Below, piece by piece: positions 10,764 through 63,682 of a stretch of DNA of 64,000 bases (position 1 is the stretch's first letter; each line of letters starts with the position of its first letter). The position numbers and the translations under genes were made by a program. The notes under the pieces are model-generated. The model ran no database searches, was not told where the DNA came from, and was given only the letters and a program-made list of their open reading frames with translations. The DNA comes from Podarcis erhardii (lineage: Eukaryota), in the NCBI GenBank assembly GCA_964252035.1, contig OZ176208.1; one strand, given 5' to 3'.

Positions 10764-11235
10764 GTTCACCAACATCAAGACCGGGGAGAGACATTTCAGT
10801 GCCAGCTATGCCCATTTACCTCCTCTCGCCACTTCAGCCTCAAACTCCACATGCGCTGCCACCAGCACTTCCTGAGGACAGAAGCCAAAGTGAAGGAAGA
10901 GATCCCAGAAATGGATGTCAAGGGGTCGCCATTGCTAAGTGACAACTCCAGAATGGGGCAGCAGATGGATGGGGCAACAGACCACGCAGGGACTGCGGCC
11001 ACCTCTAAAACTCCTGAGGTGGCTGGATCTACTGTCCCACCTCTGCTAATAAAAGAAGAGCCCAAAGATGACAGCAGCACCTCCACCCCAACCTTCGCTC
11101 TCAGTGTTGTTGACAGAATCACCAACAACACAAAGCTAAAAGACTCCATTGACTTTGTGACCAATACAGCGTCAGCACTTTTCAGCCAGGACATCTCTGT
11201 CAAGATGGCATCAGATTTTCTCATGAAGCTCTCAG
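10764..11235 (+). CDS. ZNF827: ZNF827 exon 4, zinc finger 3 plus first KEE/QDISVKMAS repeat
   Basis: Acceptor TAATCAG|. Encodes VHQHQDRGETFQCQLCPFTSSRHFSLKLHMRCH...VKEE...IKEEP...LFSQDISVKMASDFLMKLS. Donor TCAG|GTAAGG. 472 nt, phase 0 to 1. Confidence 0.97.
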
Positions 11236-15757: not shown

Positions 15758-16771
15758 ATGTTATAAAGTCACTGAAGGAATGGAATATATCTGAAAGATG
15801 AAAATGTAAACTTGGTAGATATGTCAATGCCACACAAGGGGAAAGATGTTATGCTAAAGGAAGAAATTAAACCCATTGATCAGAGCAATGTGTATCCAAA
15901 ATAGTGTGCGGAATTGTACATTTGACCAGCACTGCGATACTTAACAGAGTTTCAGCTCATAAAACAGCAGGCAATGATGTTTTATTTAGTGGGCTTGCGA
16001 AATTTACTAGCAATGTTTTAGGAGAGTATTTCCATTTATTATAATATGAACAACGGCAAAAACTTAGATGGAGCCTGAGGATAGTTCCCTGTCAGCCTTT
16101 TCCGCAAAATTGAACTTTATCCCCAGCCACCCAGCTTGCTTTGGCTCAGATCGATGCGTTGCAGGCTTCTCTGCAAATGAGCAAAATACAAAGGGTGCAA
16201 TTAAAGAAAGGAAAAAGTGCCAGGGCTTGACAGCTATATGTCTGATTGGAGCAAGCTGCATATCCTGCCACTGCAGGCATTATTTGAGGAATCCTATGGG
16301 CTTGGGGGGTGGGGAGCTCCCTCTGTTGTTCTGTGAGACACTTATCTCCATTGTCCCAAAACCTGACAAAGGTTTTTTTTAAAATGATGTAGTGCTGCTT
16401 CATGGATGCAACAGAACTCCAAAGGCAGCTTGAAGCATTACTGCCTATTGAGGATCCTAACTTTTTGGAATTCCAATAGATTAACCAGTGGGATGAATTA
16501 GTGCTTCTTCCCCCAGACTGCATCAGAAAGTATATTCTAGGATTGGCATTCAGAAGGCATCAGCTATCTGGTTGCCTTTTGTGTAGGATTTTGTGTAGGA
16601 ATTTATCAGTACTTGTTGCCTCTTGAAGCCTGCCCAATTTGGTTTTCTGTGTAGAGTTCCCTGCCCTGCACCATCATCCCAAACTGTTCTCCATGACTCT
16701 TGTGAACTTGCTGTCTTCTGATGATACATTTACGCACTTCACTGAACCCTTTCCTCCCCTTCTGTTAACAG

Positions 16772-17005
16772 CTGCAAATCAAAAAGAACCCTTGCCTCCT
16801 ATATTTAAAGTGAAAGATGAACCGAAAGATGAGGAAAATGCAAGTTCCACTTTTCCTAAATCTACTTACGTTTTTAGTCCTGAGCCTGAAACATCTTCCG
16901 CAAGCCTTCCCGAGGAGAATCTCAAGCCACAAGAAGTGCCAGCGAATGCATTGCAGCAGGACATGTCTGTCAAAGCAGCATCCGAACTTCTTATGAAGCT
17001 ATCAG
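16772..17005 (+). CDS. ZNF827: ZNF827 exon 5, second repeat exon
   Basis: Acceptor TTAACAG|. Encodes (A)ANQKEPLPPIFKVKDEPK...ALQQDMSVKAASELLMKLS. Donor TCAG|GTACCA. 234 nt, symmetric phase 1-1. Confidence 0.95.
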
Positions 17006-17227
17006 GTACCAGATTGATTTTTAAAATATTCAGCTTTCTTTTTTTAGTTGTGAAGTTGCCTCGTTTTAGTTACAACAAAGAGGGCTTTAATAGCTAATTA
17101 CTGTGATGTACTGATGTTGACTTTCTAACAACCACTATCAAATTATTGCAAAATATTTCTGGTTCCTCTTTGTGAGCTTTTTACAGTTCCATACTTGGAA
17201 CGGCTACGACTTTGGGATAACCTAGAG

Positions 17228-20739: not shown

Positions 20740-21061
20740 CAGGGTTGCCCACTTATGTGTTGCCAAAACAGAGGACGTGCATCATTCAAAAAAGAGGACA
20801 ATAATTTGCATAAAAATCACATGATATATTATACAAACGGTCACAAATTTAGAAACAAAATAACAAAATGATACATACACTTCACCATACTGCGGAAGAC
20901 TTGTGTGCCTGTTGACTATACTGACCAGGTGCTGCTAACTGTTGATAGACAGTTTCAAGGACCCTGCTCTCCCTTTTTATGGTCCACTGTCTTTAAAGCA
21001 GATTTGGACTGGACATTCAAAACAGGACTTTCCTCTAATGTAGGATATGTTGCCATCCTAG
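20740..21061. mobile_element. Degraded MITE with AGGGTTGCC-type ends
   Basis: cagggttgccc..aaaaaagaggaca at left and aaaacaggactttcctc..atgttgccatccta at right. Confidence 0.45.
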
Positions 21062-23574
21062 TATAAGCAGGCTTGTTGTGGAATGACATTGTAGCATCAG
21101 GCTCTTTCTCAACCTACACACATCTGTTTGAATGTCTGAAGATGGCCAACCCACACATACACTCTCTTCTGATGTTCAGATGAATGTGTGTAGATCGGGC
21201 ACAGAGCCTACCACAAGAGTGCCACCGAATGCATGCTGCCTGGAAAGAACATCTGTAAAGGGCTTTATTTGGAATGACTATGTAGATAGCATAAATACAG
21301 ACATTCATTAAGCTGTCTACCAGTTGGGAAGACAGTGGCCTTGCTTGGTGGTGGTGGTGGTTTGACAACTGGCAGAAAAACAGGAAAGACTGCCCCTCCC
21401 TCCTCTGCTCCAAAAAAAGCTGGATTCCTTTGTACTGAGCACCATCTCTAGGTCACCAAAAATGACAAGGGTTTTGCCCCATGCTTGCTTACTTCAAGAG
21501 CTGGGAACTGTGGCCATTCCTCTCTTGAATACCAAGACTAGAACCTTCATCAAGCCCAGCTGCCTTTTCAAAGTGATTTTTTACCACAATATGTGTGTGT
21601 GTGTGAATATATTGTTTGTGTGTATGTATTCACATAGTAAGAAGTGAAAAAGGAGATGGGGAGACAGCTTTTGATTTATGTTTGAGGGAGTAATATTCAA
21701 GTATACACCTTGATACATAAGTCACATTTACAGCAGCATTGTAAGTGTCTGTAAGATAACTATTTGTCCAATATATATACTTGTGTGGTAAAGATTCAAA
21801 CAGTAACATTATATAAGTTTGGAAGGTTATTTCACCTGTTTACCAGACCAGAAAGGAAATAAAAATATACAATGTGCATCAGTATTTATTCAACAGTGTT
21901 TGGATTTCATCATCTCTGTTTAGATGTATAACACAACCACGTGTTTCTGTTATTGTATTTATGCAAGCAGAGTAGCATGTGCTATTGAAACATTTTTTCC
22001 ATCTTGAATAATTTGAACTAGCATAACTGTCCTTCCTACAATCCAGTCCACTAAAACAACAGAGGCAACACCCTCCCCCAAAACAGATGCTCCTCAGCTT
22101 GTTTACATCAAGGATGGGGAAACTCAGGCTCAGTGGCCAAAGGGGGCCTGCTAGGCTTGTCTATCTGGCCTTCAGAATTTCCCCCGGGCTGCACCCCTTA
22201 ATGCCCCACCTTTGCACCACAAGTGCTTTTGCTTGGTTGGAATTTGTCCTTGAAATTTGACAGCGCCTCTTGCTTGTCAGGATGGTGGATACAGTGTGTG
22301 TGTGTGTAAGTGTGTGTAAGTGTGTAAACAAGCCCACTGTACAATGTTAAAATATACATTCATTGCTCTACCCACTGTTGTCTCTGGCTTCTGACATGTG
22401 GTCCTCAGAAAGTTGCCCAGAAGGAAATGCAGCTCTTGGGCTGAAAAAAGCCTCCCACCTCTGGTCTACATGGATCATTCTTGCCTTGCATGTACTCAGC
22501 TGAATGCAGTACATCTAATCAAGCATTGGGGACGGGGACACATTCTCCTAAAAGAAAGTGCCTTGTTTATTTTTTTGGAGAGGAGGGTTGAAACAGGAGT
22601 GAAATAAGTATTGTTTATGAATCTAGTACATTTCATAATACCCAGAGCAGAACATATTAAGAAACATTTTCCTGAATATCTTTATCGACCTTGCAGGCCA
22701 AATTTGACAGGGGGTTAGGATCCCCCATATAAACCCCTTCCTGGAGAATGCTGAGCTAGATTTAAACCCTGCTTATCCACTGGTGTTTTCAAGAGGTTTA
22801 CAAATAACCTACGTTTTGTTTTAAAGGTCACTTTAGGCTCTCACTTAGATTCAGGGTCTCTTTACCTCTGGTTTTAATTCTTAAATAGCTAGAGTTACTC
22901 TTTCAAGTTTTTAAAGGTCAAATCCACATCCTGCAAAGTTTACACTTTAATATATGTTATTTTATATATGTGTGGGTCTTATAGCACAGCAGGTTCATTG
23001 AGTCATTTCCTCTTCAGATACTCTTTGATGACAATAACACTTTGACCTTTGCTTTAAATGCATTGCAGAATGCAAAGATAGAAAGCTTAAGGTTTTTTTT
23101 TAAAGAGAATAACTGTTTTCCTACAATAAGAGCTTTTTCTTACAATATTGTTGAATTGAAACATTCACCTCAGTGTCTCTATTATCTTCTAAAAGAGGGT
23201 TGGGGAAAAGAGCATGGGAGATCTTTCAATTTTTAGCCATAATAAACCTTCCTAAGTAAAGCACTGTTCAAAACTCCCCAAGGTAGTGAAGGATTGATTT
23301 GTACATAGTTTTGAAAGATGGTATAATCCTCACTTTATCATCTATGTTTCTCAGAGAGGCATTTATCTGAAGTTCGCCCTATGTGAAAATGGAGGAACAG
23401 TATACCAGGAAAACAAGCTTTCATTCTGATGTAGAAAGGACTGCCATGTCAAGAAGGTGTAGAATTGCCAGGTCTTCTGAACCCTAAGAGTGTTCTTGTG
23501 TTCTTTAGAGTTCTTCAGAGACTCTTCTGTCTGCAGAGATAATAAGAATGCTGAACACTTGTATGACACTTTCA

Positions 23575-23795
23575 AGTGTCTGAAGTGCTTCATGTCATTA
23601 TCTAGTTGTAAACCTTACAACAACCCTGTAAGACAAAGTCAGTATTATTATCTCCACGTGTTGTTGAAGATGGAACTCAAACCAATAAAGTGTGGTTTGC
23701 CCAAGGTCATCAAGTGAGTTCATGGCAAGAGTAAGATACAAATCAGTGATCTTCTAATTCATAGCTCCATCTCTCAGCCAGTACACTATACCAGG
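23575..23795 (-). mobile_element. MIR-like CORE SINE
   Basis: ccttacaacaaccctgtaag..tgcccaaggtcatcaagtgagttcatggc motif. Same family at 42335-42560 and 45605-45848. Confidence 0.6.
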
Positions 23796-23854
23796 TCTCC
23801 AAGGCAAATGGAGCAACCAGAGACTGACCAACCCTGGTCTATGGTCCTGATGAG

Positions 23855-24006
23855 ACCAGGTTCCTGGTGCAATCCCCAGCATTTCCAGGTTGGGCTGAGA
23901 ATTTCTCCTCTCTGAAACCCTGGGAAACCTCTGCCAATCAGTATTGACAATACTAAGGTTGCTGGACAATTAATCTGACTCAGTACAAGGTAGCTATTTA
24001 TGCCCC
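23855..24006 (+). mobile_element. tRNA-derived squamate SINE, 5' truncated
   Basis: caatccccagcatttccaggttgggctg..ctgaaaccctgg..tgccaatcagtattgacaatact..ctgactcagtacaaggtagct. Same family as 49300-49500. Confidence 0.65.
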
Positions 24007-24074
24007 TTTATGGTTGTGATTGCAGATAGATGATTGTCCCTCTATGGGACACTAAGGTGGTTTAGTCCCTGTGT

Positions 24075-24168
24075 GAGTATCTTTAAACAACAGGAATTGC
24101 CAGGGAATGTGTTAAAAGACAGAACATGTCAGTCAAATCAGCATCTGAGGTTCTTAGCTGGCAGATAG
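24075..24168 (+). pseudogene. ZNF827: Decayed paralogous copy (pseudo-exon) of the 3' half of the ZNF827 repeat exon 5, inside intron 5
   Basis: Hand alignment to 16915-17005 gives 60/78 nt over 26 codons, with +1 and +2 insertions. Repaired translation EYLKQQELPGNVLKQNMSVKSASEVL versus ENLKPQEVPANALQQDMSVKAASELL. The donor position reads G|TT instead of G|GT. Confidence 0.8.
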
Positions 24169-26870
24169 TTGATTCATTTACCACATCACAAACTTATGCA
24201 TCCATCATTGCAAAGACCAAAGCCCTCTTGGGTGTTCACTCCTGGCAAGTCCTGTCCCCTCTGGCACTTCACCTTGCCCATCTTTACAGCCAAGGGCTTT
24301 CTTTGGAAGCAAGGAGGCTCTTCTAGTTATGGGGGACCACAGCAAGATTCAAATCAGGGTTCTTAATTGCTTGGGGAGCCTTAGTGAGGAGGTTCCCTGC
24401 TTCAGATGAATACCTTTCAGCTCAGAAGGGGCTGTGCTAGCAAATGTGTTGCATCCTACACTCAAAAAAGGCTGTGATCCCAAGAGTATCTGGCACTGTG
24501 AAACAGTGTAAAAGAAGGCATACCCACTCACATTGCATATACTGGAAAGACGCAGTTTGGCACATCACCTCCTGGTTTGATCATTGATCACTGGCAGAGT
24601 GAGACGGCTGCCCCAGGCAGCAAGTACCAAGGGTATCAAGCAGGCAGAACTATGTGTATCACATGACCTGCCTGCAACACTCTAAGCTAGTCTAGTGCCC
24701 TCAGGTGCAGTGGAGATTGGTGTCCCATTGTCAATATTGAAGTAAGAGTCAGTCTAAGGCTGTGTATACACCATACCTTTAAATAATTCTGGAAACTGAA
24801 CTACAGTTCTCAGCAGTGCTTTATCCCTAGAAAAATAGGTGCTGGTACTCACCATGAAGTTGTTACAGTAAATGCCATACTTTTTGACAACAAAAAAAGA
24901 TATGTCAGTACTGCGTACCTTTGAGTACCCCCGGGGGGGCGGGAAGCACTCATCGTCATCTTTTTATTTATGTGCCGCCTTTCCACAGTTAAAACAATGC
25001 TCAAGGCGGCTTACAATATGAAAAGGTTTAACATAATTACAAATCTAGCAAAGTAGTCATAAAATTATAAAAAACACATTAAAAACTACGTAACCAAACT
25101 GAACAATTTCCACATAAAAATAAAGATACAGAAAGGTAATATCCGTTAATATCAGTAACGACAGCAAAAACTCCCAACAAAACTTCTCCCCAAATACCCC
25201 AGTCCTTGCTGGGCAGCACTGGTTCTCAGCCCCCTTAAGAAACTACAATACCCATGATTCTTTAGGGGGGTGTGCTTTAAATGTATGATGAATACACAGC
25301 CTAATTGGCTTCTATATGTGAAATGGAGGAAGGGTTGCCATCATGTTATTTGCCTCAGGCAGCAAAATGCCTTGGGCCGGCCCTGTCTCAGTGAAAATAT
25401 GGTGCAGTGGGTAGGAAACTGCAGATTCCATTATGCTATTCCTTTTTTCCGTACATCATTGCTGTGTTACATTAATTTACATCTAATCTGTATGCTCTCA
25501 GATTCCCCCCCCCCGAGGGGAGCCATGACGCTAACAATGTGTACCTTCCATTGTAAGGCACTTGAAATCTAATAATAAATTATGGTGAATTCAGTTTATT
25601 ATGTAAATTCCATAGTGTGCTGACTAGAAGCAGTTTGAATCATTTTATGGTGGATATTTTCATAGGGAGTTGCTTATGACTGGATGAGATCATCCTTTGG
25701 AGAGAGATCACATGGATTCTAAAAATTAAAAAATAATGTTGGCTTTTCTACTCAGAGTGCAATTGCTAAAAACTAGCTCCCAATATTTTTGGCATACTAA
25801 ATGACTGTGCTGAAATGTATTGCAAGGCAGTAGAAGAAATGTGCTGATTTGATAAATGAAGAATATTGCTTTGAGTGTTCCAAGAATATTACATTAGGCA
25901 ACTCAGCTGATCTCAAATAAACGTTGTAGATGATGCACTGTTGTTACCATTTAATCCGTATACAGTAGTCAGTACTCAACTAACCCTATTTGGGCATGAG
26001 CTCCTCAAGTTAAGCAGATGCTGAACTTAATCTGAGTGGGTCCTAAAATACATGACTTTGGCTGGATTGTGTCCATTGTTTTCATGTTTAGGTTTCCTTA
26101 AAAAGGGGAGGAAACCTGAAGAGGAGCACAGAATATTGTGTAGTGCTCCTGAGGAAGATTCTGTTCTGAACACATTGGGCCAATAAGCAGTACCTTGTGC
26201 ATCTAGATGCTTCCTCCCTTTTCCTTTCTAGATTGGGGCCTCTTTCCCTTTTCCTGTTAGCCCTTCCAACAGAACATTTCCACTGAACCACTTTCCCCTT
26301 CAATGCATTTGATGTACCTTTGGCAATTTTAATAATAAATTGGGGAGGCAATATGCATAGTAAATGTTTGCTTACTGATGTAATCTGCTTAACACGGTGC
26401 CTTGTTTTTGGAGGATTTTAAAACCAGAATGGACCATTTGCTTTAAGTAATAAATGAGGTGGGATGCCTCTTCCTACACTTGACTATTTATCTCTTTAAA
26501 AAAAACAAATTCTCTTGAGATTCTTGTTCCATTATGGCCCAAATGAGTTTACAGTGTGGTCTTCATGACTAAACACTGTTTGCTACAGCATAAGCCTCTA
26601 TGCATGTAGGCTGTCCTCTTTACCTGGAACTCTAAGCATGCTGGATTCCAGCTTACAGGGACCACCATTTCTGCATGTTTGGCAGCCTGTGCATCCCTTC
26701 AGAGACCACCTATGTGCCCTTTCAAACCTTCCCTCTACACATAGACAGCATCAGGAAGGGGCCAAGAAAACCACAGAACATCAGGTTTAGTGCTAAGGGT
26801 GCAACACTTTTTCAACAAGATTTGCCCCTTCACATGAGTAACACAAAAAGGGAGTGTCAGGTGTGTTTGG

Positions 26871-27476
26871 ATCATAGAATCATAGAATCATAGAATCATA
26901 GAGTTGGAAGAGACCACAAGGGCCATCGAGTCCAACCCCCTGCCAAGCAGGAAACACCATCAGACCACTCCTGACATATGGTTGTCAAGCCTCTGCGTAA
27001 AGACCTCCAAAGAAGGAGACTCCACCACACTCCTTGGCAGCAAATTCCACTGTCGAACAGCTCTTACTGTCAGGAAGTTCTTCCTAATGTTTAGGTGGAA
27101 TCTTTTTTCTTGTAGTTTGGAACCATTGGTCCGTGTCCGCTTCTCTGGAGCAGCAGAAAACAACCTTTCTCCCTCCTCTATGTGACATCCTTTTATATAT
27201 TTGAACATGGCTATCATATCACCCCTTAACCTCCTCTTCTCCAGGCTAAACATGCCCAGCTCCCTTAGCCGTTCCTCATAAGGCATCGTTTCCAGGCCTT
27301 TGACCATTTTGGTTGCCCTCCTCTGGACATGTTCCAGTTTGTCAGTGTCCTTCTTGAACTGTGGCGCCCAGAACTGGACACAGTACTCCAGGTGAGGTCT
27401 GACCAGAGCAGAATACAGTGGCACTATTACTTCCCTTGATCTAGATGCTATACTCCTATTGATGCAGCCCAGAATT
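26871..27476 (-). mobile_element. Young 5'-truncated CR1 LINE
   Basis: Uninterrupted 154-aa RT C-terminus ([25 protein letters not shown]...), (ATAGAATC)n tail at 26871-26901, and TTGGAT on both flanks as a likely TSD. Confidence 0.93.
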
Positions 27477-35303: not shown

Positions 35304-35439
35304 NNNNNNNNNNNNNNNNNNNNNNNNNNNNNNNNNNNNNNNNNNNNNNNNNNNNNNNNNNNNNNNNNNNNNNNNNNNNNNNNNNNNNNNNNNNNNNNNN
35401 NNNNNNNNNNNNNNNNNNNNNNNNNNNNNNNNNNNNNNN
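35304..35439. other. Assembly gap (136 N)
   Basis: Run of N seen directly. The X-filled ORFs across it are artefacts. Confidence 1.
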
Positions 35440-41349: not shown

Positions 41350-41589
41350 CGGAAAGTTGCAAGGAATCTCAAATAATAAAGATCAAAGAAGAGCCCATGG
41401 AAGTTGATATTCATGATTCCCAAGCCTCAGTTTCACCTAGCCAAAACATCAGTTATAGCACTTTACTCAGGCAAGAGATAACTGAACACATACAAAAGAT
41501 ACCAGAAGGCCGAGTGCTCCCTGAGAGAAACCTCTTCAGCCAAGATATATCAGTGAAGATGGCTTCAGAGCTACTTTTTCAGTTGTCAG
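41350..41589 (+). CDS. ZNF827: ZNF827 exon 6, third repeat exon
   Basis: Acceptor TTTGCAG|. Encodes (A)ESCKESQIIKIKEEPMEVD...PERNLFSQDISVKMASELLFQLS. Donor TCAG|GTAAAT. 240 nt, symmetric phase 1-1. Confidence 0.96.
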
Positions 41590-52500: not shown

Positions 52501-52734
52501 ACGCAGGAGAGCTGCTGCCAATCAGAGTTGACAATACTGGGTTGGCTGGACAAGCAGGCTGACCTGGTATAAAGCAGCTTTCTATGTTCCTAGCAATCAT
52601 GTTGGCTTAGTTTTGTTTAAGCTTCTCTCACATATCAGCGGTGATTCATAGAATTGCCATATCCTACTAGCTATGCTGAATAGCTAGGAAGTGCTTGCCA
52701 GCTGGAGGCATATTGCAATTTGCAATACAGTCTT

Positions 52735-62100: not shown

Positions 62101-63682
62101 TGCTGCATTTCAACCAGAACAGATGGGCTAGATGCAGGAATTGCTAGATGGATTTTTACAACACCTTTGAAGCAGAATGTCAGGTTTAAGTACCATAATG
62201 GCTACCTTCTTGCCTTAAAAATCACCAAGTCTATAAACGATTACTTCAGAAGAGCAGTCACACAGCTCAGCAATTTAGCCTGTTCTGTTTTGCCTTCCTC
62301 TGTTATTTATGGCTTAAACTTCTCAGTGTTGGAACATTTGGAGCAATGAAGTGAATGAAAGATGCTACACAACTGTATAGGCATAACTCTTAACAGCTGG
62401 TATCATGAAACAGAATTCCTTTTGTAAGTGTTAAAAGCCACTATGAGAGCACGTGCGGTGAGGTGAATTCTGACCGCTGTAACTATAGTATTGGTATTCA
62501 TGAAAACCACCTTGAAAAACAAATCTGCCACTGTAGGATTTGCATTTCATCAGTGGTGAGGCTAGTTCAATTTATGTCCAGCAGTACCAAGTACACCCAT
62601 GTTAACGAAATACCACAGATAATTGTGGCTTTGATTATTTGACCCTCTGAAGGATGCCCTGTTCCTGTAAGGAAAGATGGGATAACCACAAGAGTTTTGC
62701 AACCTTAAGATCATATTGGGGAGTAGATGTGCTATGCAAGGGACAACGGGAAAAGCTTGATTTCAGTGGAAGTATCTGTGCATTAAAAGTGAACTACTCA
62801 ATAGTACTGTTTCCACAGGAGTAAAATTTTGATTAAAATTAAGAAATAAAAGCGGTTGCAGACTAAGATGCTCCAGTTACTCTGAAATTGTCAGTAAAAG
62901 AGGCTATACTTGCCTACACAGGCTGGCAACTGCTCTCCCTGGTTTCAGACAGGACCTTTTCAACCCTACCTGGAGATGCTGGGGATTGGACCTGGGAGCT
63001 TTTGTTTGCAAAGCAGATGCAAAGAAGAACCATAAAAGAGAGCACTTGCGTGGTGGCATCGTGCTTCCAGAGTCTTTCCTGAGAGTTTGAGGCTAATGAA
63101 TGCTATGTGACTTCCCTACCACTTTACAGAGTTGCTTTCAGCAGGAGTGCCAAGTTGAATAAAATATTGCGGTGGGGGGCAGGTAAGCCCTGCCCCGCAT
63201 AATTGATCACATGACATGGTGCATGCACACCATTTGAATCGCAATGCCCATCAACTTTGGGGGGACCTGACTCCCTCAAATATTTTATTGGGGGCCCCCC
63301 CGAAGCCCTTAGGAGTTAGCTCCTATGTTTTCAAGCCATGCTTTTAACATGATTGTAACATGGTCTCCAAGGAGGCTCCTGGCCTGCCTAATGTTAGTAT
63401 GATTAGTGCAATAAAGGAATCCATTGTCTAAGGCTGCAGTCCTAACTGTCTACTGAGAAGTAAGTTCTACTGAATTCAGTGAGGCTTACTTGTGGGTAAG
63501 CGGGGTTAGGATTACACCTTGATTGGTGCCACACAAGAATCGTACCCATGTACCACGACTGACAGTATGGAACAGTAGCATTGTGTTGCTCATGACATAT
63601 CCAGTGACACATAGTGTGGAATCAAGTTATGCCTTTGAGTCATTAATATTAGAACTGTATTTTCTCCTTTCTTGGGGAATAG

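What the first reader, a model, noticed from the sequence alone, without database searches (positions are those of the whole stretch)
24075..24168. Fossil extra copy of the ZNF827 repeat exon hidden in intron 5
Seen: 24075-24168 aligns to exon 5 nt 16915-17005 with 60/78 identical nt over 26 codons. Seven of the 18 differences are synonymous third-position changes (ctc/ctt, aag/aaa, caa/cag, ttg/tta, tct/tca, tcc/tct, gaa/gag). It is on the same strand as the gene. A +1 insertion creates an immediate TAA, a +2 insertion follows, and the phase-1 donor position reads ATAG|TT rather than TCAG|GT. Inference: this was a fourth repeat exon that stayed coding for a time and was later inactivated. Its GNVL(R) segment looks closer to the recalled mammalian exon 5 (GSVLRRD) than to this lizard's own ANALQQD, hinting at an old duplication. 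I know of no description of this.
Basis: partly seen in the sequence, partly recalled or inferred. Interest (0 to 1): 0.78.

Follow-up and report, generated by a model that had tools for sequence, protein, structure and literature searches.

The report
Decayed partial copy of ZNF827 exon 5
A lizard ZNF827 intron holds a real, old, broken copy of the last 100 bases of the neighbouring repeat exon plus the first bases of its intron; nothing shows that it ever coded, so it is an ordinary relic of exon duplication.

Summary
Window 24062-24183 (+) is homologous to the 3' ~100 nt of the ZNF827 R2 exon (16772-17005): blastn gives 48 bits, E 4e-8, against a maximum of 31 bits in 200 simulated introns. 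A seven-species exon 5 profile gives 53.7 bits, E 2e-16.

- **DNA-level copy.** The match runs about 19 nt past the exon end into the conserved start of the intron.
- **Broken.** It has +1 and +2 insertions, a 4-nt deletion and CAG|AT in place of CAG|GT. It has no acceptor and no trace of the first ~130 nt of the exon.
- **Single copy.** It lies in single contigs of three related lizards and has no flanking inverted repeats.
- **Old.** It keeps ancestral bases that the lacertid exon has lost. The best ML placement is the squamate stem, and a lacertid-stem origin is not rejected.

"Stayed coding for a time" is unsupported. The relic's own changes are 2 synonymous to 7 non-synonymous, as expected under neutrality. 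None of 127 long vertebrate orthologues has a fourth repeat.

No RNA data were available. Orthologous introns of distant squamates could not be fetched. It is a new member of a known kind and of modest interest.

The parts
24062..24164 (+). Relic of the 3' part of ZNF827 exon 5 (about exon positions 132-234). The secure core is 24075-24164. Read codon by codon it gives E Y L [+1] K Q Q E L P G N V L [+2] R Q N M S V K S A S E V L [-4] L A.
   Evidence: blastn E 4e-8. nhmmer with a seven-species exon 5 profile: 24076-24183, 53.7 bits, E 2.3e-16. Codon table. R2 protein profile hits VKRQNMSVKSASEVL, E 0.03 in the six-frame window, the only hit besides the three real exons.
24165..24183 (+). Relic of the first ~19 nt of intron 5. 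The donor GT is now AT (24165-24166).
   Evidence: The nhmmer alignment continues past the exon end. ATAGTTGATTCATTTA matches turtle GTAATTGATTAATTTA at 13/16 positions without gaps.
24082..24084 (+). +1 insertion (one T in a run of T) that gives an in-frame TAA at 24084-24086.
24113..24116 (+). +2 insertion (AA within a run of A) in front of the AGA (Arg) codon.
24155..24156 (+). Site of a 4-nt deletion relative to exon 5 (ATGA of ATG AAG).
16772..17005 (+). The living parent, ZNF827 repeat exon R2 ('exon 5'): 234 nt, phase 1-1, flanked by AG and GT.
   Evidence: Orthologous exons in six other sauropsids are all 234 nt and align without gaps.
10764..11235 (+). Exon with repeat R1 ('exon 4'), given for context.
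41350..41589 (+). Exon with repeat R3 ('exon 6'), given for context. The relic lies in the 24.3-kb intron between R2 and R3, 7.06 kb downstream of R2.
23814..24008 (+). Interspersed repeat (SINE-like) just upstream of the relic. It is context only and not part of the relic. Its 3' limit is my reading.
   Evidence: Summed contig depth is 26-35 times baseline in bin 23814-23947 and 3.4 times in 23948-24081. In-window partial copies lie at 52515-52553 and 62992-62941. The SINE identity rests on my recollection of squamate SINE consensus sequences and was not tested.

Best explanation
A stretch of genomic DNA holding at least the last ~100 nt of ZNF827 exon 5 and the start of intron 5 was duplicated locally. 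The copy landed in the same orientation, 7 kb downstream in the same intron. Today the copy is a dead, single-copy relic. It has three frame-breaking indels, an immediate stop codon, a donor mutated from GT to AT, and no acceptor or 5' exon part. It has drifted neutrally. The duplication is old. It postdates the lepidosaur/squamate-specific changes in exon 5, and it predates most synonymous changes on the lineage to lacertids, so it falls somewhere between the squamate stem and the lacertid stem. Shown here: homology, strand, extension into the intron, the disabling lesions, single-copy status, presence in related species, and retention of ancestral bases. Inferred: the mechanism (unequal crossing-over or replication slippage), the date, and the lack of function.
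For: The match is significant against controls and improves with a cross-species exon 5 profile to 53.7 bits, E 2e-16. That exceeds the scores of exons 4 and 6 against the same profile, 37.7 and 18.8 bits. Homology continues 16-19 nt into the intron. Indels, stop codon and AT donor. No 5' exon homology upstream. Contigs of three other species span the segment as single pieces at baseline depth, with no listed difference inside it. Twelve of 21 differences from the window's own exon 5 are bases that other sauropsids' exon 5 still has. The nine unique changes are 2 synonymous and 7 non-synonymous, as neutrality predicts. The relic shares the squamate-derived CCA (codon 9), AAA (codon 20) and xTT (codon 25), but has GTG, AGA and GAG like turtle and bird at codons 12, 14 and 24. 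ML placement: squamate stem is best (ELW 0.33), and placement as sister to a living lacertid exon is 5.6 lnL worse.
Against: Only 87 aligned exon sites carry the dating. No placement except 'sister to snake' is rejected at 5%. Three third-position states (codons 10, 26, 28) are shared with lacertids and pull towards a younger origin. The relic's branch (0.18-0.22 substitutions per site) is about half the third-position divergence of the living exon over the same path (0.36). That fits a younger origin, a low local rate or some constraint. There are no RNA data, so residual use as a cryptic or poison exon is untested. Absence of the 5' part does not tell a partial duplication from later loss.
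Confidence: 0.8

Rival explanations
1. A complete fourth repeat exon (234 nt, phase 1-1) arose by tandem duplication and was spliced into ZNF827 mRNA for a period, as an extra repeat or as a mutually exclusive partner of exon 5. It was later inactivated and lost its 5' part.
For: The repeat exons are symmetric (phase 1-1), so an extra copy would stay in frame. The copy included the donor region. The relic's branch is shorter than a purely neutral history from the squamate stem would predict. Most of its replacements are conservative: V>L, A>S, D>N, L>V, S>A.
Against: There is no excess of synonymous change on the relic's own branch: 2 of 9, P = 0.78. There is no acceptor or 5' exon sequence. 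None of 127 long orthologues has four repeats, and no fourth-type repeat appears among the 61 hits of a profile search of 1.84 billion representatives.
Confidence: 0.15
2. The exon fragment was captured and moved by a transposon (Pack-type hAT, or transduction by a retroelement), as reported elsewhere in this genome for SPR exon 1.
For: High-copy repeats flank the relic at 23814-24008 and 24752-25000.
Against: Depth over the relic is at the single-copy level in three species. There are no inverted or direct repeats bracketing it: the repeat finder gave none, and the best reverse-complement match between the two flanking repeats is 11 nt. It sits in the parent gene's own intron, on the same strand, 7 kb from the parent, which a local duplication explains more simply.
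Confidence: 0.04
3. The segment is kept for a non-coding role in splicing of the ZNF827 repeat exons, for example as a decoy or poison exon or an intronic enhancer. That would explain its slow decay.
For: The branch is shorter than expected. Exon 5 has strongly conserved intron flanks across sauropsids, and some mouse and chicken isoforms lack one repeat, so this region is under splicing regulation. An acceptor-like site (tgattgcag|, ending at 24025) and weak GT sites lie nearby.
Against: No RNA run holds the stretch. The donor is destroyed. The indels and substitutions are spread evenly over the segment. Conservation could not be measured beyond close relatives.
Confidence: 0.05
4. Chance similarity or an assembly artefact.
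For: None beyond the short length.
Against: E 4e-8 and 2e-16, with controls at 31 bits or less. Independent contigs of three other species carry it.
Confidence: 0.01

Closest known systems
Tandem exon duplication and its decayed products (Kondrashov & Koonin 2001; Letunic, Copley & Bork 2002, as cited in PMC5224494; gain and loss of duplicated exons in PMC5740500)
   Same: A copy of an exon lies in the adjacent intron on the same strand. It was made at the DNA level together with flanking intron sequence. The parent exon is symmetric in phase.
   Different: Only the 3' ~40% of the exon survives, with a dead donor and no acceptor. There is no evidence that it was ever alternatively spliced. I found no paper describing this for ZNF827: one paper holds both search terms, and I did not open it.
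The three-repeat core of ZNF827 (R1-R3: ...KEEPK... then QD[IM]SVK[MA]AS[DE][LF]L..LS), each repeat ending an exon at TCAG|GT
   Same: The relic carries the R2-type end of the repeat (PQEVPxNVLRQDMSVKAASELL becomes QQELPGNVL-RQNMSVKSASEVL). It derives from the same kind of event that built the three repeats.
   Different: The three repeats are present in every long orthologue from coelacanth and fish to mammals. The relic is a later, squamate-lineage event and is not part of any predicted protein.
Pack-type hAT capture of SPR exon 1 in this same genome (scan note s1-229638)
   Same: An exon fragment plus the start of its intron sits at a secondary site inside an intron.
   Different: That case has 10-20 copies and transposon ends. 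Here there is a single copy, no terminal repeats, and the fragment lies within the parent gene.

Membership tests
Relic of a tandem (intragenic) exon duplication | Statistically significant similarity to a neighbouring exon of the same gene | tested here: met
   48.2 bits, E 4e-8, against a maximum of 31 bits in 200 simulated introns. Profile hit E 2e-16.
Relic of a tandem (intragenic) exon duplication | Same strand as the parent exon and located in the adjacent intron | tested here: met
   On the + strand, 7.06 kb downstream of exon 5, inside the R2-R3 intron.
Relic of a tandem (intragenic) exon duplication | Similarity extends into flanking intron sequence, showing a DNA-level rather than cDNA origin | tested here: met
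   On the 3' side, 13/16 matches to the conserved intron start, and the nhmmer alignment runs to 24183. The 5' side could not be assessed because that part is missing.
Relic of a tandem (intragenic) exon duplication | Not a dispersed multi-copy element | tested here: met
   Baseline depth in three related species. No second copy in the window. A whole-genome copy count was not possible.
Relic of a tandem (intragenic) exon duplication | Coding capacity destroyed | tested here: met
   +1, +2 and -4 indels, an in-frame TAA, donor AT, no acceptor.
Functional cassette or mutually exclusive exon of ZNF827 | Open frame in phase 1-1 with AG/GT splice sites | tested here: not met
Functional cassette or mutually exclusive exon of ZNF827 | Present in proteins or transcripts of this or other species | tested here: not met
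   None of 127 long orthologues has four repeat motifs. No extra repeat type among 61 profile hits. RNA of this species was not available.
Formerly coding exon (purifying selection on its own branch) | Excess of synonymous over non-synonymous change on the relic's branch | tested here: not met
   2 synonymous and 7 non-synonymous changes, neutral expectation 0.285 synonymous, P = 0.78. With only 9 changes the power is low.
Transposon-captured exon fragment (Pack-type) | Terminal inverted repeats and several copies | tested here: not met

The most novel reading that the evidence does not exclude
Stem squamates or lepidosaurs carried a working fourth ZNF827 repeat exon, a duplicate of exon 5 used as an extra repeat or as a mutually exclusive alternative. 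It was later silenced, and an intact or less decayed version may survive in tuatara, geckos or other unsampled lineages. The relic would then date a gain and loss of a repeat in an otherwise fixed three-repeat architecture that is more than 400 million years old.
Probability: 0.12. Interest if true: 0.5.

Novelty: new member of a known kind. Interest (0 to 1): 0.3.

Why it matters
It is a clean example of exon birth and death inside a gene whose three-repeat core has otherwise stayed fixed from fish to mammals. The duplication process that built the repeats acted again in the squamate lineage, and this time the copy was not kept. The relic also preserves ancestral codon states. Its AGA bridges AGG of turtle and bird to CGA, CAA and CAG in living squamates, so it serves as a small molecular fossil of the old exon sequence. 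There is a practical lesson for the scan. Synonymous-looking differences between a relic and its living parent must be polarised with outgroups before they are read as evidence of past coding. No medical or functional consequence is expected.

Tried and rejected
- **Second relic at 21211-21234.** It matches exon 5 at 24/25 positions, 33.7 bits, E 0.001. The cross-species profile does not support it, a lenient alignment scores below intron controls, and it lies in a 119-nt stretch deleted in organism B. I treat it as probable chance.
- **5' part of the exon copy.** nhmmer found nothing in 22500-24100. A local alignment of 23880-24075 scored 19 against controls of 17 ± 2.4.
- **Orthologous introns of other squamates.** Full-length orthologues are either not on record (Rhineura isoform) or the gene spans 136 kb, so no DNA is served (Elgaria). 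Only short Logan contigs around exon 5 could be fetched.
- **ORF overlapping the relic.** A word search with 24126-24323 for orthologous ORFs in other lizards found no candidate.
- **RNA evidence.** No RNA run holds the stretch, so inclusion could not be tested.
- **Species names.** Names of the lacertid and gecko-like sequences are hidden in the collection. 'Gecko-like' rests on the position of P0104 at the base of squamates in a quick protein tree; the careful tree search did not finish.
- **Transposon carriage.** No inverted or direct repeats were found.
- **Bird contig.** No second exon-5-like copy in the 11-kb contig L006 or in the other fetched loci.
- **Not used.** Structure, complex and RNA-family tools have no bearing on a 120-nt pseudo-exon.
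- **Spliced model.** Exons were searched one by one by reference.
- **P0212.** This peptide comes from a JGI metagenome contig and matches what I recall of the human exon, so I take it for human. I did not look up or fetch its contig. The peptide was printed with the other hits, and my blanket script swept it into the R2 profile.

Full report
**Gene context**

The window carries part of a ZNF827 orthologue on the + strand.
- A large exon ends near position 1003.
- The exon with repeat R1 is 10764-11235.
- The exon with repeat R3 is 41350-41589.
- A zinc-finger exon lies near 63600.

The three repeat exons all end TCAG|GT in phase 1. They share the pattern ...K(E/D)EP... then QD(I/M)SVK(M/A)AS(D/E)(L/F)L..LS. 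The finding lies in the 24.3-kb intron between R2 and R3, 7.06 kb downstream of R2. I searched the exons one by one by reference and did not build a joined spliced model.

Yes.
- blastn of exon 5 against the whole window finds 24075-24156 on the same strand: 75.6% over 82 columns, 48.2 bits, E 4e-8. Only exon 4 (E 5e-7) and a 25-nt match at 21211-21234 (E 0.001) also stand above noise.
- In 200 first-order Markov simulations of the intron the best hit averaged 24.7 bits (SD 1.85, maximum 31.0). The reversed intron gave 22.9 bits.
- An nhmmer profile of the gene's own three repeats finds only one extra site in the window, 24082-24156, E 6e-7.
There are 59 to 60 identities in the first 78 aligned bases and all seven listed synonymous pairs are present. 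A +1 insertion produces GAG TAT CTT TAA, and a +2 insertion follows.

**What is the segment?**

I obtained the orthologous exon 5 DNA of six other sauropsids from short public contigs. These were reached through ORF fragments found in two protein searches (contigs). The six are a second lacertid, a snake, two gecko-like lizards, a turtle and a bird. In all of them the exon is exactly 234 nt, aligns without gaps and is flanked by AG and GT.

Results with a profile of these seven exons plus their intron flanks:
- The profile hits 24076-24183 with 53.7 bits and E 2.3e-16. That is better than the gene's own exon 4 (37.7 bits) and exon 6 (18.8 bits) score against the same profile. The segment is therefore specifically an exon 5 derivative.
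- The alignment needs a 4-nt deletion at 24155/24156.
- The alignment then continues into the intron. ATAGTTGATTCATTTA matches the turtle intron start GTAATTGATTAATTTA at 13 of 16 positions without gaps. The copy was therefore made from genomic DNA and included the exon-intron junction. Its donor GT is now AT.
- Upstream, homology may reach about 24062 (TCCCTG) but no further.
- Neither nhmmer on 22500-24100 nor a controlled local alignment of 23880-24075 finds the first ~130 nt of the exon or its acceptor. That part of exon 5 is well conserved among squamates. If it were present and as well kept as the 3' part, it should be seen.
- A high-copy interspersed repeat lies just upstream at about 23814-24008. 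Nothing exon-like lies beyond it.

**Is it a repeat-family member or an artefact?**

It is neither. Contigs of four related species were laid on 21000-25000.
- Three of them (X4, X12, X20) span the segment in single contigs (22324-24854, 22324-24775 and 23872-24853).
- Summed depth in bin 24082-24215 is at the single-contig baseline. Nearby transposon pieces pile up 30- to 4000-fold.
- No difference or indel is listed inside the segment, although that table is truncated.
- The fourth run (X17) had no contig there, which proves nothing.

There are no inverted or direct repeats around the relic, and the two flanking repeats share only 11 nt in reverse complement.

**Did it ever code?**

- There are 21 substitutions between the relic and the window's own exon 5. 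At 12 of them the relic's base is still found in some other species' exon 5.
- Those changes arose in the living lacertid exon, where synonymous change is expected whatever the relic's history.
- The nine substitutions unique to the relic are 2 synonymous and 7 non-synonymous. The neutral expectation is 28.5% synonymous, so P(2 or more of 9) = 0.78.

There is therefore no sign of purifying selection on the relic's own branch, although nine changes give little power.

Surveys of other species point the same way.
- A profile search of 1.84 billion representative proteins returned 61 hits, all assignable to R1, R2 or R3.
- Among 127 ZNF827 proteins longer than 700 aa, none has four repeat motifs. 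The set includes Rhineura, Varanus, Elgaria, two Anolis species, Tiliqua, Pogona, Hemicordylus, Liasis, other snakes, four unnamed lacertid-like sequences, turtles, crocodilians, birds, amphibians and Latimeria.
- Those with two motifs are either sequence variants my pattern missed or isoforms that skip one repeat exon.

**How old is it?**

The codon table shows three groups of characters.
- **Squamate-derived states shared by the relic:** CCA at codon 9 (turtle and bird have CAG, two changes away), AAA at codon 20, and T at the third position of codon 25.
- **Ancestral squamate states kept by the relic where lacertids have changed:** codons 4, 6, 13, 18 and 23.
- **States matching turtle and bird against all sampled squamates:** GTG at codon 12 and GAG at codon 24. 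At codon 14 the relic's AGA is one step from AGG of turtle and bird, and one step from CGA of gecko-like 1, which leads on to CAA (snake, gecko-like 2) and CAG (lacertids).

Three third-position states (codons 10, 26 and 28) are instead shared with lacertids.

I compared the likelihood of all eleven attachment points on the fixed species tree.

| Attachment point | lnL difference from best | Test values |
|---|---|---|
| Squamate stem | 0 (lnL -943.6) | ELW 0.33 |
| Within or beside the geckos, or on the snake+lacertid stem | 1.6-2.6 worse | not rejected |
| Lacertid stem | 3.2 worse | AU p 0.32 |
| Sister to a living lacertid exon | 5.6 worse | AU p 0.13 |
| Sister to snake | 3.8 worse | AU p 0.044, the only one rejected at 5% |

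The duplication is therefore old. It is certainly older than the several lacertid species that share it, and probably older than much or all of the lacertid stem, but 87 sites cannot fix the node.

One oddity remains. The relic's branch is 0.18-0.22 substitutions per site. That is about half the third-position divergence of the living exon from the squamate crown node to this lizard, 0.36. A somewhat younger origin, a low local rate, ascertainment of only the best-kept piece, or some constraint could each explain this.

The resemblance to the mammalian GSVLRRD is mostly retention of ancestral V and R. The Gly is probably the relic's own change, and it also arose independently in a gecko-like lizard (VPGNVLQQD).

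**Conclusion**

The segment is a decayed, single-copy, partial DNA-level duplicate of the 3' end of ZNF827 exon 5 and the first bases of its intron. It is a pseudo-exon left by an old local duplication in the squamate lineage.

Whether a complete fourth exon once existed and was used cannot be decided here.

Tandem exon duplication and loss of duplicated exons are well known (Kondrashov & Koonin 2001 and Letunic et al. 2002, as cited in PMC5224494; PMC5740500). I found no paper describing such a relic for ZNF827: the one paper holding both search terms was not opened. This is a new member of a known kind and of modest interest.

**Limits**

- No RNA run holds the stretch.
- Orthologous introns of distant squamates could not be fetched, because the gene range exceeds 100 kb or the isoform is not on record.
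- A word search with the ORF overlapping the relic found nothing.
- Taxon labels 'gecko-like', 'snake', 'turtle' and 'bird' for the Logan contigs rest on matching their exon 5 peptides to named orthologues and on a quick protein tree whose careful search did not finish.
- One hit, P0212, comes from a metagenome contig and looks human to me. I did not look up its contig. The peptide was listed, and a blanket script included it in the R2 profile.

Noticed in passing
window 21211-21234 (+): A 25-nt stretch matches exon 5 positions 155-180 at 24/25 with one gap (33.7 bits, E 0.001), on the same strand and in the same intron. The cross-species exon 5 profile does not support it, and it lies in a 119-nt stretch (21192-21310) deleted in related organism B. 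It is probably chance, but a second, more decayed relic cannot be excluded.
   Followed up: partly
window 16713-16771 and 17006-17091; L001-L006 around exon 5: The intron flanks of exon 5 are strongly conserved across lizards, snake, turtle and bird: about 60 nt upstream and 40-85 nt downstream, for example ATATTCAGCTT. Mouse and chicken have predicted isoforms that lack one repeat exon. This suggests that exon 5 is a regulated cassette exon with conserved intronic splicing elements.
   Followed up: partly
window 22206-22473, 23546-23679, 23814-24008, 24752-25000: High-copy interspersed repeats: summed contig depth is 6 to 4000 times baseline in four related species. The repeat at 24814-24940 gives many 'goes back' and 'opposite strand' joints, as a hairpin-forming SINE or MITE would.
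   Followed up: partly
window 26960-27424 (-): A 154-aa ORF ([26 protein letters not shown]...) looks like the C-terminal part of a CR1/L2-type LINE ORF2. This is from my recollection and was not tested.
   Followed up: no
window 35304-35439: A run of 136 N (assembly gap or masked). Left as it is.
   Followed up: no
P0198 / L003 1105-1338: A second gecko-like lizard has VPGNVLQQD in exon 5. Both the Ala>Gly and the Arg>Gln changes in this short segment have therefore happened more than once in squamates, so single residues here are weak phylogenetic markers.
   Followed up: yes
P0212 (protein hit, source JGI metagenome contig of 8.5 kb): An exon 5 ORF fragment whose peptide matches what I recall of the human sequence, probably human DNA in a metagenome. 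Its contig was not looked up or fetched.
   Followed up: no
window 16948-16950 (codon GCA in ...PANALQQD): This species has Ala where the other lacertid sequences (except P0135) and most squamates have Val (ANVLQQD). The same Val>Ala change is seen in Anolis carolinensis and in the unnamed lacertid P0135.
   Followed up: partly
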